The position numbers were made by a program, and so were the translations under genes. Positions 2,943 through 40,984 of a stretch of DNA of 64,000 bases are shown one piece after another; the stretch's first letter is position 1, and each line of letters begins with the position of its first letter. The notes beneath the pieces were generated by a model. It did no database searches. It saw only the letters and a list, made by a program, of their open reading frames with translations, and was not told where the DNA came from. The DNA is from Asterias rubens (taxonomy: Eukaryota), in contig NC_047080.1 in the NCBI RefSeq assembly GCF_902459465.1, positions 744,001 to 808,000 on the forward strand. The letters run 5' to 3'.

Positions 2943-5900
2943 ATAGATGTTCAGGTTAGCTCTGGGACATAAAAGAGCGTGTATCAAAACAGAAAATCAA
3001 TGGGGTGTAAATATATCAAAATGGGTTAATGTCTAACAAAACCGAATGAAGAAACAATAAAATGAACCTCACTATTACCATATTTATTTTATTCTACATT
3101 TCAATATCTCTATATACAAATTTTAACCAGAAATCTTTAATTAGAAGAATAACATCCAACATTACAACTCTTCAAATCTAAGCAAGCTATAAAATTGTAA
3201 ATTATTACAAATGCTCATTCCACTGTGCTTTGAGTTTACACATTAGATGACTTATAATTAATATCAAGGTATCTCTTTCACATCTGGATAAAATGTAACG
3301 ACAATAATTAATCCCAAACACCCACAATAGAAGACAATCCAATAAAACAAAATGTTAATTTTCGTCCTAATGAAAGTCAAGCTCACTATTATAATTGAAA
3401 GGAGATTTAAAGTGGCCATAATTTCTTTTAAAACAAAACAATAAATATTAAGTTTTCATTGAAAACGAATCCTGTTTTGAGCAAAATAACAAGCGGACAT
3501 TCATAATTGAATATCAAAAACTTCATAAAAAATATCTTTGACTAAGTTTGATGATTGAATTTATGTAGTAAATACAATGATAAACCCCCTCTATGTTCAT
3601 TGTGCCTGGAGCATTACAGAAACCAGCTCAACTCCTTTGGAGTATGCAGCACCAGCAACCAAATGAAAGCATAGGTTGCTATTCATTCGCATAAACAAAT
3701 CTCCCATGTACCCGTTAATTCTGGGGCGATGATAAGCAATATGCAGATGACTGGGATTCTAACCCACACTATAATGACCCAATCATCAGTACTTCTGTTT
3801 AATTCATGGTTGAGGTCTGGAGACCACTATAATTCTCTTTGTGCTAAGCACTCAATACAGCTTTAAATGGCATATTCTACTTCGTGCTAAGCTCATTTTG
3901 GCAACCATCTTCTGAAAGTTCAACTTGTGAAACTGGTGTGAGAAAATAATAAAGCTGTAGCATTTCTGTGCTCTAATAATATTAATACAAAATATGTAAA
4001 ACTTCCCCCGAAATCAAGATAAGGTTGTAGAAGTTCAAGATATTTACATGTGACCAACTTGACCCAGTGTCTGCCCTGTGTCCAATGAGTTTAATTAAAA
4101 CATGTTTATTTCTCAAATTCTTTCTGCTGATCACAAAATAACTGATTGTACCTTGTGCATGAAAACAACTTTTCCCCACCTCAAAAAGTGATATGCACTT
4201 AAACATACACATAACATAGCTTTTACAATAGCTTTAAGTATTTTTTTCAACTTCCACCAGAATCTATCATTGTGTCTATGAATCTATTACCGACTGAAGT
4301 TATAAGTTATTTGTAATATCAATCTTAATTATTTCAACCTTCAAGGTAAATCTACTTGTCACAGTTTTCATAATTATTTCTTATTCTTATTTTCACATTT
4401 TATAAATTACATTATTGTTGAACCTTTTTCTACATTAATTAATTGTTCACACCAGAGATACTTTCACAAAATAAATATAGCTTTGATTAAATATATATAT
4501 TTCCTCTAGTTTGCTTCCGGAAAGATTTGAGAGAAGTGCAACAAATATATACAAATAATTAACCTTAGTATGACTAAACCAGGGCCTGAACGATAAATAA
4601 GAAGAGAATTTCAAATATTTGAAGTGATTAAATGAAAATTAATATAATAACATTAGAGGAAAAAAAACATAATTAGATAAATGAATAAAAATAAGAATAA
4701 TTTATTAACTGATATGATGTTTGCTTTTAAATTTTCAAATACAAAAAATGAGCAAAGGTTATTTGATTAAGAAAACAAGTCAATAAAAAGAAAAACCTTA
4801 AGAAGTTTGAATATGGAAACTATTTGATGCAATGTCACGTTTTTACTAAGTTAGGCCATCACATTAATTCATCAAGGTTTTGTTTTAAAATTTGTTGTTT
4901 ATTTATGAGGAAAGATTTTTGGAATGTGTTGTCTTTGAAACCCTGAAGCCATACTCGGACATCTCTGAATCTTGTAATAAGCAATTACACATTTCCAGAT
5001 AAAAGTTTGACTAAACCTTATACATTTGTGTAACTGTTAGTGTAAGATACAAGTGAGTATTTGTGAAGATTCGTTATCCATAACGAGAATTATTGCTAAT
5101 TTCGATAATACAGTATCTCTAGCTATATAGAATGGTTTACACTTCAAGTGAATTAATTCGCACAAGGTGTTTAACGTGTATATGTAAGTACTTTGTTGTA
5201 ACATAAGAATACAATCTATGAAAATTTACAGCTCAAAGACGTGACCACCTTATATTGAAAACATAGTCAAAATATATACAGATCATACCTTACATTTATC
5301 TGGGTGTTTTTACATTAAATTAAACTGAAAGACAATTAATTTGTTAACGCAAAAACCTTAATTTTTAAGACTTTAAAAACTGCGGTTCATCTTTACTGTT
5401 TAGAGTAGCTTTTTTTGCAAAACACGATTTCACCCAGTGAGAACAAGAAATTATTATGACAAGCCAAATTAACAGTGCAGTCCTGTTCAACAGGGTCATT
5501 TGCATAATTTATGCAAAACAGATGTAACTACTACTACATCTGTAATGATCTTATTTACATATTGACAGCAACCTTCGACTTGGAAATCACCTTTTATGTA
5601 CACACAGATAGAACAAGCAAAAACCCAGTATAGAATGGAAATATCCCAATTTAAAAATCAAGTTTAAGTGATAATAAAACCCACATTTTCACAATTCAGA
5701 TAAAATTAGTCACACAAAATGGAATGAAATAATCATTTTTAAATTTACAGACATCTGGCAACTCAATACCTTACTGCTTAGCAGGGGAAAAAGTTGCTAA
5801 GCAGGATCAGGACACCAATCCAAATGTTACAAACTGTGCGTTTTGTTTGACCAGTGCCTAGCTTTGATAAGCCAAATTTACTCAAATCCTATACAAATTT

Positions 5901-33298: not shown

Positions 33299-37531
<4,233 letters not shown>

Positions 37532-37636
37532 CTAATTGGAAAATGTTATACTTTGCCCTTAGGGTAATTTGCTTTCTCTTATTAATTCAGAGTTATCAAG
37601 TTGACTTATTTGAAAGAATAAACAAGCCCTAACAGA

Positions 37637-38193
37637 CCCAACAGACCATGTATCCCAACAGACCATGTATCCCAACAGACCATGTATCCCAACAGACCAT
37701 GTATCCCAACAGACCATGTATCCCAACAGACCATGTATCCCAACAGACCATGTATCCCAACAGACCATGTATCCCAACAGACCATGTATCCCAACAGACC
37801 ATGTATCCCAACCGACCATGTATCCCAACAGACCATGTATCCCAACAGACCATCTATCCCAACAGACCATGTATCCCAACAGACCATGTATCCCAACAGA
37901 CCATGTATCCCAACAGACCATGTATCCCAACAGACCACGTATCCCAACAGACCACGTATCCCAACAGACCACGTATCCCAACAGACCACGTATCCCAACA
38001 GACCACGTATCCCAACAGACCACGTATCCCAACAGACCACGTATCCCAACAGACCACGTATCCCAACAGACCACGTATCCCAACAGACCATGTATCCCAA
38101 CAGACCATGTATCCCAACAGACCATGTATCCCAACAGACCATGTATCCCAACAGACCATGTATCCCAACAGACCATGTATCCCAACAGACCAT
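37637..38193. repeat. 17-bp minisatellite (CCCAACAGACCATGTAT) x about 33
   Basis: Direct reading of the array. Nine consecutive CCACGTAT variant units. Explains the 184-222-aa repetitive ORFs on both strands. Confidence 0.97.
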
Positions 38194-38972
38194 TATTCCT
38201 GACAACCATAAACAATATAATCAACAATCTGACAAGGTTTGCGCCCTCTATTGAAAATTTTTTACAACTGCGGTGTCTTTTTGTGCATATTATCTAGGCA
38301 CTGAAGAGTGAAGACACCACAGCAAAGGGTGCGCGGTGCTTAACACTTCCGTCCGTGCCCGGGGCACGCCTGGATTGGTGTATTACCACAATATTTCAAG
38401 ACTTCACTTTCTAAAATCTTATCAAGTGAGATGTGAATTCATAAAAATGATTGAAGAAACCACTCGCCATTTGGCTCAGTCCTTTATAGATCCTACGCTA
38501 CAACCAGAACCCTGCTCGTTTTTTTTTAAATAGCAGGAACGCTTTGTTGCAACACTTTTATTCCCTTAAAGATTAAATATAGTCCTAACTAATGCTTTAC
38601 TATCGCACCACCAGACATCAGGTGGGTGTCCTAATAAAAAAGCGTTTGGCGCCCAACCCAACCAAGGAAAAAAACACCAAAAATACACTTATTAATATTA
38701 GGCCTACACATGTAATTGTAATAACATTCAACTCAACAATGTTTTAAATTGTTAAAACAAGGGTTTATTAAAATATGTTGATTTCTTCATTGTAAATTAA
38801 AGATAAAAGTCTAAACAAAAACAGCAACTTACCATAAAAATAGAACAAGTCATGCATGACAAAATGACATACAAACAAACACACACATTTTGACATGTTT
38901 GACAAGCTGACAAGTGTCTACTCAACTCTGTCTGTCTGCTGACTTACAAATCTATCTATAAAAGAGTTATTT

Positions 38973-39018
38973 GATGCCTCTGAAGAAGGTCCGGATTGGA
39001 TCGAAAGCTAAGGCCATC
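38973..39018 (+). ncRNA. Minimal type I hammerhead ribozyme (Penelope-like element/retrozyme type)
   Basis: Stem I GAUGCCU / AGGC(C)AUC; core CUGAAGA; stem II GGUCC / GGAUC with a 5-nt loop; GAAA; palindromic stem III AGCU; cleavage triplet CUA (cut after 39010). Embedded in a 19-bp direct repeat (38957-38975 and 39031-39049). Confidence 0.75.
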
Positions 39019-39372
39019 TACCCTATTCATTATAAAAGAGTTATTTGATATCATATGGTGATGTACAGGGTCCTTTTACGAAAAATAATGAATGGTTAAT
39101 GGGAAAACTAGGTAGTCATCGCCAAGCATCGCCACCAACCGGCGCAGAGTCAGTGTGGTGTGATGGGACAACTTTGTACGGCGCCCTACCGGCATCAGCT
39201 GCACAGATGGAACGGTACAACACATAACAGACAGACAGAGCCGAAAAGCGTATACAAACATATCACTTTTATCGCAACCTTTAAATACTCACACAATATT
39301 CACACCACTAGATGAATAAAAAAACTCTGCCTCGTCCGATCTTGACTGAAGCTGACGTCAAATCTTTCTTAC

Positions 39373-39470
39373 AAATCTGAAAAATCAGGAGAGAATTTCT
39401 TGTTTTTTTTGCTGTGTAAATGCGGAAGATTTCGCTCCCGTGACCCTCGTCCAAGATGGCCGCTTGCAAA
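39373..39470 (-). other. Probable non-coding first exon of Rab14
   Basis: Minus-strand donor GTAAGA starting at 39372. The matching acceptor TTTACAG (AG at 37467-37466) lies just upstream of the ATG. CpG-rich. The TSS position is approximate. Confidence 0.55.
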
Positions 39471-39560
39471 CCTCCCTCTGATATGACGTCATATCTAACA
39501 GCAGAGAGAGAGGTGGTCGATACTACTGCGTGCGCGCCGCCCCAAAGACCAAAATTGATT
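39420..39560. promoter_or_regulatory. CpG-rich bidirectional promoter shared by Rab14 and TSC1
   Basis: Head-to-head genes. YY1-like CAAGATGGCCGC (39452-39463) and a perfect 14-bp palindrome ATATGACGTCATAT (39481-39494) containing a CRE. Confidence 0.55.
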
Positions 39561-40832
39561 TCTCTGTTTTTTCTTCAGGTCGTCTTGATGCGAATTTAAA
39601 AACCGTAAAAAAAGCAAATAGCCAACGATTTCAAAAAATCAGTTACGTTGGGGGTGGATTTTCCCTCCTCAATACTCTATCTCGGAACAGGATGCTCGTA
39701 AATGACACCTGTTATTTCTAAACCAAAGTAGTTGAGTCCTCCCCCTCTAGTCATCTGTTTCTATGGTCCTCCTCCGTTCACCGCCCACAATTTATTGTTC
39801 ATTTTGGAAAATGGAAGCAAGCTAGCATAGGATGATGATGCACCAACACATTTTCCACCCCATCAATTTCGGCCGCCACGCCTTGTACAACACGTTCAAC
39901 ACAGTAGCCCCCCCCCCCCACAAAAAATGGCCTGCTGCCATGCTGGTAGGTCGACCACACCTAATAGGCCTACTCATCTCATGTGCCACATCACACCCAC
40001 CCGGCCTCATCATGCATCCACCCTGGAAAAATCATACAGCGAATGGTAAGGTTTGATATTGTGTCTATTTTATTTACCTCTTATTGTGAAAGAAATTATA
40101 AAAATGTACACGACATAAAACAACACAATAAATATGTTTGTTTTACTTGTTGAAACTTTCTAATAAAGGGGATCGGCAGAGAGCTTTTCACTGGTGATGG
40201 GGCCCGGGGTCAAGCAGGAAGAAAATAAGGGATGAGGCATATACCGGCGAAGAGATGGCGGTAGGCAAGGACACAAACAAATTAGTTTGCATGGGTAATG
40301 ATTCAAATCTACTTGTGACTGGTCAATTCAGGGTAAAAGCTTCTCAAGCCAAATTATCCTAAAGCCAAAAATGCAACCGGCAAATCCCTTTATATGCGGT
40401 TGTTTGGGGTTGGGGGGGGGGGGGGGGGGGGCGGGGGTGTTGATTTCCTTCCATGGTGCTCACAAGAGGGCGCACTTCAAAGTTAGTGGTCCTTTTTTGG
40501 ATGGTGTACAAAGTGTGATCTCCTACCTAGAGTCCTATAGCCCTGACATTAGAGAGTACTGACTGCTTTGTACAGCTCAATTTCATCAAGGTAAGGGTCA
40601 TTTGATTATGTTGAACCAATGCCTATAGGACACAAGTAAAGTCCTTCCACAAAACCTTTGAATGTTAAGCAAAATGAAACCTGACACCAAACGAAACACC
40701 CAGACTACTTTCCACACTAAAACCATGGTAAAACTGAACTACACTACTTAAGTTATACAGTACACCCAGTCCATTAGACGGATTATTGACCTCTGACCTG
40801 TATAGCAGACTTGACCCATATTTGTTCATATA

Positions 40833-40984
40833 GGGTGCATTCGTTTAGCTTCCCTGGGTCGACCCTAGTGTGTGGTGGTTTTTTTTCCCAGGACGAACGT
40901 GTGCAGATTTTTACCCACGTTCGTCCTGGAAAAAAAAAACGCCACACACCGGGGTCGACCCAGGGAAGCTAAACGAACGCACCC
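40833..40984. mobile_element. Palindromic MITE (about 70-bp arms, about 14-nt loop)
   Basis: GGGTGCATTCGTTTAGCTTCCCTGGGTCGACCC..CCAGGACGAACGTG and its near-perfect reverse complement CACGTTCGTCCTGG..GGGTCGACCCAGGGAAGCTAAACGAACGCACCC. Confidence 0.85.

What the first reader, a model, noticed from the sequence alone, without database searches (positions are those of the whole stretch)
38957..39049. Intact minimal type I hammerhead ribozyme inside a 74-bp unit with 19-bp terminal redundancy
All catalytic core positions are present: C3-U4-G5-A6-A7-G8-A9 (38980-38986), one extra A, stem II GGUCC/GGAUC, G12-A13-A14-A15.1 (39003-39006), G-C, U16.1 and A17. Stem I has 7 bp with one bulge. Stem III is the loop-less palindrome AGCU, typical of the minimal hammerheads of Penelope-like elements and retrozymes that cleave as dimers. 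The flanking repeat TATAAAAGAGTTATTTGAT (offset 74) looks like a monomer plus a partial repeat from such an element. The motif lies in Rab14 intron 1, antisense to Rab14 and about 450 bp from the Rab14/TSC1 promoter, so it could cut plus-strand antisense or read-through RNA or yield small circular RNAs. No reverse transcriptase ORF is nearby.
Basis: partly seen in the sequence, partly recalled or inferred. Interest (0 to 1): 0.8.

Follow-up and report, generated by a model that had tools for sequence, protein, structure and literature searches.

The report
Truncated Penelope retrotransposon tail with hammerhead
The hammerhead-ribozyme motif is real, but it is only the last 55 bases of a common, recently active Penelope-like retrotransposon that landed in a Rab14 intron and duplicated 19 bases of target DNA, which is an ordinary and already described kind of insertion.

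Summary
A descriptor scan finds this one site in the window and none in 200 shuffles.

The interpretation needs correcting. The motif is the 3' tail of a ~4.06-kb Penelope-like element (PLE) with one RT plus GIY-YIG ORF and a pseudo-LTR layout. The genome holds 750 near-identical copies of the ribozyme and at least 15 uninterrupted ORFs at 98-99% identity. The window copy is a severe 5' truncation: 55 inserted bases (38976-39030).

The 19-nt repeat is a target-site duplication, not the overlap of a 74-nt tandem or circular unit. Other truncated copies carry their own 10-25-bp duplications, nearly all starting ATAA. The predicted tandem junction occurs nowhere in the genome. One public run has a contig that skips exactly these 74 bases, which is the empty site.

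The copy lies in Rab14 intron 1, antisense, about 260 nt from the exon-1 donor. As a lone minimal hammerhead it would need a partner RNA to cleave, so activity here is unlikely.

The scan has met this PLE/hammerhead system before elsewhere in this genome (e.g. s1-150093). Known kind, low interest.

The parts
38957..38975 (.). Left copy of the 19-bp target-site duplication. The first 5 nt (TATAA) and last 2 nt (AT) are also compatible with the element's own ends (microhomology).
   Evidence: D2 (exact repeat). (family-wide duplications of 10-25 bp, nearly all starting ATAA). (the 19 nt fit both sides of the 74-nt skip).
38976..39030 (+). Inserted 55-nt 5'-truncated 3' tail of a Penelope-like retrotransposon. 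BLAST homology to the parent runs over 38967-39031 because of junction microhomology.
   Evidence: 97% identity to the last 65 nt of the reference copy, L033:4902-8964.
38973..39018 (+). Minimal type I hammerhead motif. Stem I is 38973-79 with 39011-18 (C39015 bulged). The core is CUGAAGA at 38980-86, with an unpaired A at 38987. Stem II is 38988-92 with 38998-39002. GAAA is at 39003-06 and the palindromic helix III AGCU at 39006-09. The predicted cleavage site is after A39010.
   Evidence: Architecture matches the PLE minimal hammerheads described in PMC4209133.
39031..39049 (.). Right copy of the 19-bp target-site duplication.
37466..39292 (-). Rab14 intron 1 (inferred), which hosts the insertion in antisense orientation. 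The acceptor AG is at 37467-66 ahead of the ATG exon (ATG at 37453-51). The candidate donor GTGAGT is at 39292-87.
   Evidence: Rab14 exons on the minus strand. (polypyrimidine tract plus AG). (donor sequence and promoter-like motifs at 39350-39500). (high-depth contigs of X3 and X4 start exactly at 39293).

Best explanation
The locus is a dead-on-arrival, 5'-truncated insertion of a Penelope-like retrotransposon (PLE). The parent family is about 4.06 kb long. It has a leader, a single ORF encoding reverse transcriptase plus a C-terminal GIY-YIG endonuclease, and a 3' region of about 570 nt whose last ~60 nt carry a minimal hammerhead. Inferred mechanism: the element's endonuclease nicked AT-rich target DNA just before ATAA, and reverse transcription was primed on the element RNA's 3' end. 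Synthesis stopped after about 55-60 nt, where the cDNA could join the upstream target end through microhomology (the element's TTGTTTTAT against the target's TTATTTGAT). A staggered second-strand cut 18-19 bp away produced the target-site duplication. The hammerhead is therefore a passenger. In the parent element it belongs to the pseudo-LTR ribozyme found throughout PLEs, which is thought to act as a dimer formed through the AGCU palindrome between tandem copies. At this locus there is one copy, on the strand opposite to Rab14 transcription, so it most likely does nothing. Shown here: copy boundaries, parent element, family-wide duplications, copy number and the empty-site contig. Inferred: the order of nicking and priming, the microhomology-mediated 5' joining, and the lack of activity.
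For: The exact 36-nt core occurs 401 times, and the 44-nt motif occurs 750 times within 3 mismatches; the reversed control gives 0. All copies share one 3' end (...CTATTCATT followed by AT/ATAA) and have variable 5' ends from 60 nt to more than 1.5 kb. Longer copies reach a ~4.06-kb element whose ORF hits RVT_1 (1.2e-10) and GIY-YIG (3.2e-5). L033 shows a 415-nt upstream partial copy joined head-to-tail to a full copy, which is the pseudo-LTR layout. At least 15 copies have uninterrupted ~921-aa frames at 98-99% identity. Other truncated copies carry their own exact duplications of 10-25 bp, nearly all starting ATAA: L002 15, L007 15, L019 12, L021 15, L026 16, L027 16, L028 15, L030 14. L002 is a second tail-only copy with unrelated flanks. 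The hypothetical tail-repeat-hammerhead tandem junction is absent from the genome at up to 3 mismatches. In run X4, a 316-nt contig joins 38956 to 39031, skipping exactly 74 nt with 19 nt fitting either side; a contig of X2 starts inside the motif and runs into the unique right flank. Literature: PLE minimal hammerheads, mostly single motifs from truncated PLEs (PMC4209133); frequent 5' truncation, pseudo-LTRs and variable duplication length (PMC8557442); AT-rich target preference, and the hammerhead is not needed for insertion in vitro (PMC11167929).
Against: The empty-site contig has only 21 nt on its short side and comes from one run of unknown library type. If that run is RNA, a reverse-transcriptase jump across the 19-nt repeat could mimic a deletion. 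The window and L002 duplications resemble each other (TATAAAA.G.TT.ATT). I attribute this to microhomology with both element ends plus AT-rich target preference, but did not test it on a genome-wide sample. No cleavage or strand-specific expression data exist for this locus.
Confidence: 0.9

Rival explanations
1. One reading: the 93 nt are one monomer plus a partial second unit of a 74-nt tandem, retrozyme-like element copied from a multimeric or circular hammerhead RNA.
For: Short tandem arrays of this tail exist elsewhere in the genome: a 66-nt-period array on C5, and pairs 165 or 213 nt apart. An earlier scan note reports a 75-nt array. Animal retrozymes are thought to derive from PLE pseudo-LTRs (bioRxiv 10.64898/2026.07.22.740005).
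Against: The junction such a unit would create is absent from the genome at up to 3 mismatches. The 12 central bases of the repeat (AAGAGTTATTTG) match nothing in the parent element, whose sequence upstream of the motif is different. The repeat has the length and ATAA start of the family's ordinary target-site duplications. An empty site with a single copy of the 19 nt is seen. The C5 array has a different unit and junction.
Confidence: 0.04
2. The copy has been co-opted. It pairs in trans with abundant PLE transcripts through the AGCU palindrome and cleaves plus-strand promoter-upstream or antisense RNA in Rab14 intron 1, which influences Rab14/TSC1 expression.
For: The core is intact, and stem I is one pair longer than in the parent. 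The copy is about 260 nt from the Rab14 exon 1 donor and 350-500 nt from the divergent promoter. PLE-derived sequence is very abundant in the runs laid.
Against: The intermolecular helix III is only 4 bp, about -2.5 to -4.5 kcal/mol. Single minimal hammerheads show no detectable cleavage, and dimers cleave only weakly in vitro (PMC4209133). The insertion appears to be absent in one sample, so it is not a conserved feature. The family is 97-100% identical, so intactness reflects youth rather than selection. There is no evidence that the plus strand is transcribed here.
Confidence: 0.03
3. Chance resemblance to a hammerhead in AT-rich intronic DNA.
For: The loose core pattern CTGANGA...GAAA is not enriched in the window: 6 matches against 4.2 expected. 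Rfam models give no hit.
Against: The full descriptor gives 0 hits in 200 shuffles. There are 750 near-identical copies in a PLE tail. A second family in the same genome keeps the same core with different, still complementary stems.
Confidence: 0.01

Closest known systems
Minimal hammerhead ribozymes of Penelope-like elements (Cervera & de la Pena 2014, PMC4209133)
   Same: Type I topology and a full catalytic core. An unpaired nucleotide sits 5' of stem II. There is no helix III hairpin, only a small palindrome (AGCU), which implies dimeric action. The motif lies in the pseudo-LTR/3' tail of an RT plus GIY-YIG element. Hundreds of mostly solitary copies derive from truncated elements. The same paper reports such motifs in fish (fugu Xena).
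   Different: Stem II is 5-6 bp here, against the 7-8 bp typical of Schistosoma families. Stem I is 6-7 bp with a bulge. The 2-nt GC insert between A15.1 and U16.1 resembles the Drosophila/rotifer/shrimp variants more than the strict minimal descriptor. The PLE clade (Penelope/Poseidon, Neptune, other) was not resolved here.
5'-truncated, target-primed insertions of EN+ PLEs (Craig et al. 2021, PMC8557442; Frangieh et al. 2024, PMC11167929)
   Same: Common 3' end with variable 5' truncation. Variable-length target-site duplications. AT-rich target. Partial tandems forming pseudo-LTRs. Occasional inverted adjacent copies (L014).
   Different: This copy is at the extreme short end, with 55 inserted bases, so that nearly nothing but the ribozyme remains.
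Animal non-LTR retrozymes (Cervera & de la Pena 2020, PMC7229834; Li et al. 2026 bioRxiv)
   Same: Type I hammerhead with a weak helix III, probably mobilised by PLE machinery. Tandem short units of this same tail exist elsewhere in the genome.
   Different: This locus is not a tandem array. It has one ribozyme and a target-site duplication, and there is no evidence of circular RNA.

Membership tests
Hammerhead ribozyme (minimal type I, PLE variant) | Conserved core C3-U4-G5-A6-N7-G8-A9, G12-A13-A14, A15.1/U16.1, and a non-G at position 17 | tested here: met
   (sequence read directly). (descriptor hit at 38980-39010).
Hammerhead ribozyme (minimal type I, PLE variant) | Helices I and II flank the core in type I order | tested here: met
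   the minimum-free-energy fold of 38973-39018 gives stem I (7 bp, one bulge) and stem II (5 bp) at -13.6 kcal/mol..
Hammerhead ribozyme (minimal type I, PLE variant) | Helix III: a hairpin in canonical forms; a small palindrome that allows a dimer in PLE forms | tested here: met
   AGCU at 39006-09 is self-complementary, which matches the PLE variants in PMC4209133. The canonical hairpin is absent, and Rfam RF00163 gives no hit, so the motif is not a canonical Hammerhead_1 member.
Hammerhead ribozyme (minimal type I, PLE variant) | Stems supported by compensatory changes in related copies | tested here: inconclusive
   Within the family the copies are nearly identical. A second family in the same genome keeps the core, the bulged A and GAAAGCU. 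Its stem II differs at 4 of 5 pairs and its stem I at 1-2 pairs, all still complementary. These were read by eye from pattern output, not from a statistical covariation test.
Hammerhead ribozyme (minimal type I, PLE variant) | Mg-dependent self-cleavage at position 17 | not testable with these tools
   Needs in vitro transcription. The runs were available only as contigs, which cannot show RNA ends.
Penelope-like element (EN+) | [quoted passage not shown] | tested here: met
   Parent copies L033:5686-8394 and L031:673-2454 hit RVT_1 and GIY-YIG above Pfam's cut-offs. The window copy itself holds no ORF.
Penelope-like element (EN+) | Partial tandem insertion forming pseudo-LTRs that carry the hammerhead | tested here: met
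   In L033, a 415-nt upstream partial copy with the hammerhead is joined directly to the leader of the full copy.
Penelope-like element (EN+) | Frequent 5' truncation with variable-length target-site duplications | tested here: met
   copy lengths run from 60 nt to more than 1565 nt, with duplications of 10-25 bp. The window copy is 55-65 nt with an 18-19-bp duplication.
Non-LTR retrozyme | Head-to-tail tandem units, each with a hammerhead, able to yield circular RNA | tested here: not met
   There is one motif in the window. The repeat is 19 nt only. The predicted unit junction is absent genome-wide.

The most novel reading that the evidence does not exclude
The lone tail copy is not inert. 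It forms trans-dimers with abundant PLE transcripts through the AGCU palindrome and cleaves plus-strand promoter-upstream RNA in Rab14 intron 1. On this reading a polymorphic retroelement ribozyme would modulate the Rab14/TSC1 divergent promoter.
Probability: 0.03. Interest if true: 0.55.

Novelty: already known. Interest (0 to 1): 0.1.

Why it matters
It matters mainly as a correction. A hammerhead motif flanked by a short direct repeat looks like a tiny ribozyme-bearing unit, but here it is the signature of an aborted Penelope-like element insertion with its target-site duplication. The same family contributes hundreds of such motifs to this genome, so other hits in the scan should be read the same way unless real tandem units are present. 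The useful by-products are modest. The PLE family looks young and probably active, with many uninterrupted ORFs and an apparent presence/absence difference between samples. The genome also holds a second hammerhead family whose stems differ in a compensatory way, which supports the fold.

Tried and rejected
- **Rfam searches:** cmscan on 6 kb and on 201 nt at E up to 10, and RF00163 across the whole genome, gave no hammerhead hit. This is a limit of the model for helix-III-less variants, not evidence against the motif.
- **Loose core pattern:** it is not enriched in the window, so I replaced it with a full descriptor.
- **Tandem-unit junction:** the pattern search found nothing. The only short-period array found has a different 66-nt unit that lacks the 5' strand of stem I.
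- **Divergent PLE families by protein search:** the search returned only the same family among the 50 scored candidates.
- **RNA evidence for cleavage or strand:** all runs offered were contigs, so starts, ends and strand cannot be read.
- **Dimer folding:** ViennaRNA's dimer minimum-free-energy structure prefers a trivial domain-swapped stem II over the helix III dimer. The AGCU duplex alone is weak.
- **PLE clade naming:** not attempted, because the expensive protein searches would not change the verdict.

Full report
**1. The observation**

- The core CTGAAGA is at 38980-86, followed by one unpaired A at 38987.
- Stem II pairs GGTCC with GGATC around a 5-nt loop, or forms 6 bp with a 3-nt loop.
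- GAAA is at 39003-06, the self-complementary AGCT at 39006-09, and A17 at 39010.
- Stem I pairs 38973-79 with 39011-18, with C39015 bulged.
- The 19-nt direct repeat (38957-75 and 39031-49, spacing 74) is exact.

The free-energy minimum of the 46-nt RNA is the stem I plus stem II shape. A full minimal-hammerhead descriptor hits this site alone in the window and scores 0 of 200 dinucleotide shuffles. The bare core pattern is at chance level. Rfam's hammerhead models miss the site, which is expected when there is no helix III hairpin.

**2. What it belongs to**

BLAST of the region against the window's own genome (418 Mb) gave 1223 first-look candidates. The exact 36-nt core occurs 401 times. 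The 44-nt motif occurs 750 times within 3 mismatches. The reversed control gives none.

In the 30 loci fetched, the motif always sits at the extreme 3' end of a repeat. Upstream sequence is shared, while sequence after ...CTATTCATT(AT/ATAA) differs at every locus. The 5' ends are ragged, with copies ranging from 60 nt to more than 1.5 kb.

Longer fetches show an element of about 4.06 kb. Its ORF matches RVT_1 and, at the C-terminus, GIY-YIG, both above Pfam's cut-offs. In L033 a 415-nt 5'-truncated copy ending in the hammerhead is fused directly to the leader of a full copy, at the junction ...CATT|CCGGTCACC. This is the pseudo-LTR arrangement that defines Penelope-like elements.

A protein search of the genome found at least 15 copies with uninterrupted frames of about 921 aa at 98-99% identity. 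The family is therefore young.

**3. The window copy**

Only 38967-39031 matches the element, and it is the sole fragment of the element in the window. The parent reads ...TTGTTTTATGCCT ahead of the core, whereas the window reads ...TTATTTGATGCCT. Unambiguous element sequence therefore starts at about 38974-76. G38973, which gives the seventh stem I pair, comes from the target.

The net insertion is 55 nt (38976-39030), flanked by the 19-nt repeat.

**4. Why the repeat is a target-site duplication**

- **Family pattern.** Other truncated copies have their own exact flanking duplications of 10-25 bp. These differ in sequence but nearly all begin ATAA: L002 15, L007 15, L019 12, L021 15, L026 16, L027 16, L028 15, L030 14. 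The composite L033 insertion has one as well.
- **Independent tail-only copy.** L002 is a second tail-only copy whose outer flanks are unrelated to the window's.
- **No tandem junction.** The junction that a 74-nt tandem or circular unit would create is absent from the genome at up to 3 mismatches.
- **Empty site.** In public run X4, a 316-nt contig matching the unique right flank joins 38956 directly to 39031. It skips exactly 74 nt, with 19 nt fitting either side. In X2, a contig begins inside the motif (39008) and continues into the right flank, which is the filled form.

Caveat on the empty site: its short side is only 21 nt, it comes from one run, and the library type is not on record. 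A k=31 assembly cannot, however, collapse across a 19-nt repeat. Loose ends at 38970-75 in all four runs read the parent element's upstream sequence, which marks the copy's left boundary independently.

**5. Mechanism**

PLE features established in the literature match these observations.
- Target-primed reverse transcription after GIY-YIG nicking, with variable stagger giving variable duplication lengths.
- Heavy 5' truncation, partial tandems and inverted neighbours (PMC8557442).
- A preference for AT-rich targets (PMC11167929).

My inference is a nick before ATAA, priming at the RNA's 3' end, and arrest after about 55-60 nt. The 5' junction would be joined through microhomology, since 7 of 9 bases agree between the element and the target at that point. 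This also explains why the window and L002 duplications look alike.

The template cannot have been cut at its own ribozyme, because the copy extends 5' of the cleavage site.

**6. Is the ribozyme credible, and active here?**

The architecture matches the published description of PLE minimal hammerheads: an unpaired base before stem II, no helix III hairpin, and a small palindrome. The same paper reports that most genomic motifs are solitary remnants of truncated PLEs. It found no detectable cleavage for single motifs and only weak cleavage for dimers in vitro (PMC4209133). In Anolis PAc, catalytic mutants of the hammerhead did not affect insertion in vitro (PMC11167929).

Within the family there is no variation to test. 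A second, older family in this genome does provide a comparison.
- It keeps CUGAUGA, the bulged A and GAAAGCU.
- Its stem II is GUAGU/GCUAC, and its stem I is UGCAU/AUGCA.
- Four stem II pairs and one or two stem I pairs differ from family 1 yet remain complementary.

I read this by eye, so I count it as moderate support for the fold.

At this locus there is a single copy. The trans helix III would be 4 bp, about -2.5 to -4.5 kcal/mol. Local activity is therefore unlikely.

**7. Gene context**

- Rab14 coding exons lie on the minus strand.
- The ATG exon is preceded by a polypyrimidine tract and AG at 37467-66.
- TSC1 (Hamartin) exons lie on the plus strand from about 43400.
- The stretch 39350-39500 carries two TGACGTCA motifs and an AAGATGGC motif.
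- A GTGAGT donor on the minus strand sits at 39292-87. Contigs of X3 and X4 with depth of about 100 start exactly at 39293, while their neighbours have depth 3-8.

This fits Rab14 exon 1 ending at 39293. It places the insertion in intron 1, antisense, about 260 nt from the donor.

**8. Verdict**

The thing itself is an ordinary truncated PLE tail with its target-site duplication. The scan has met this system repeatedly in this genome: 59 notes mention it, and the follow-up on s1-150093 reached the same PLE-tail reading on other DNA. Novelty: already known. Interest: low.

Noticed in passing
window 37518-38300: A large 17-bp-period tandem array (33 or more register-shifted copies, 94-99% identity in the centre) sits in the same Rab14 intron 1, just upstream of the ATG exon (D1).
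   Followed up: no
G000 dispersed, e.g. C1:11273739-11273768, C7:1615262-1615291, C15:732701-732730: A second, older hammerhead family with core CUGAUGA, a bulged A, stem II GUAGU/GCUAC, GAAAGCU-C and stem I UGCAU/AUGCA. The 3' half has 62 exact copies. Its stems differ from family 1 in a compensatory way.
   Followed up: partly
G000:C5:213711-214189 (L039-L045): An array of at least 8 units with a 66-nt period, made of the PLE tail. Each unit keeps the core and stem II, but the 5' strand of stem I is replaced by unrelated AT-rich sequence, so the units should not fold as hammerheads.
   Followed up: partly
G000:C2:3838648/3838813, C2:8012260/8012425, C16:13933137/13933330 (L015), C3:12932017/12932522: Same-strand pairs of identical hammerheads 165, 193-213 and 505 nt apart. 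These are partial tandems (pseudo-LTR-like or retrozyme-like units) of the same tail. L014 (C21:6130125/6130328) is an inverted pair.
   Followed up: no
L033:5189-5571 and L031 (oriented) 4925-5506: The leader of the PLE, between the tandem junction and the ORF start, contains several diverged internal repeats of about 135 nt, rich in TTTTCAG-like motifs.
   Followed up: no
window 40871-40948: A near-perfect long hairpin (a T-run plus CCAGGACGAACGT and its complement) scores as mir-3747-like at E 0.00076, far below the gathering score. It is probably a palindromic repeat or MITE end rather than a microRNA.
   Followed up: no
window 39908-39923 and 40410-40425: A poly-C run and a poly-G run form an inverted repeat about 490 nt apart between the promoter region and the first TSC1 coding exons (I3-I7). 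Its nature is unknown.
   Followed up: no
several loci, e.g. L003, L004, L014, L016, L017, L018 just 3' of the PLE end: Many PLE copies are followed by, or inserted into, a short tandem motif (AAGAGCAAAMCCATATATAT). This could be a preferred microsatellite-like target or an optional PLE 'tail' extension.
   Followed up: no
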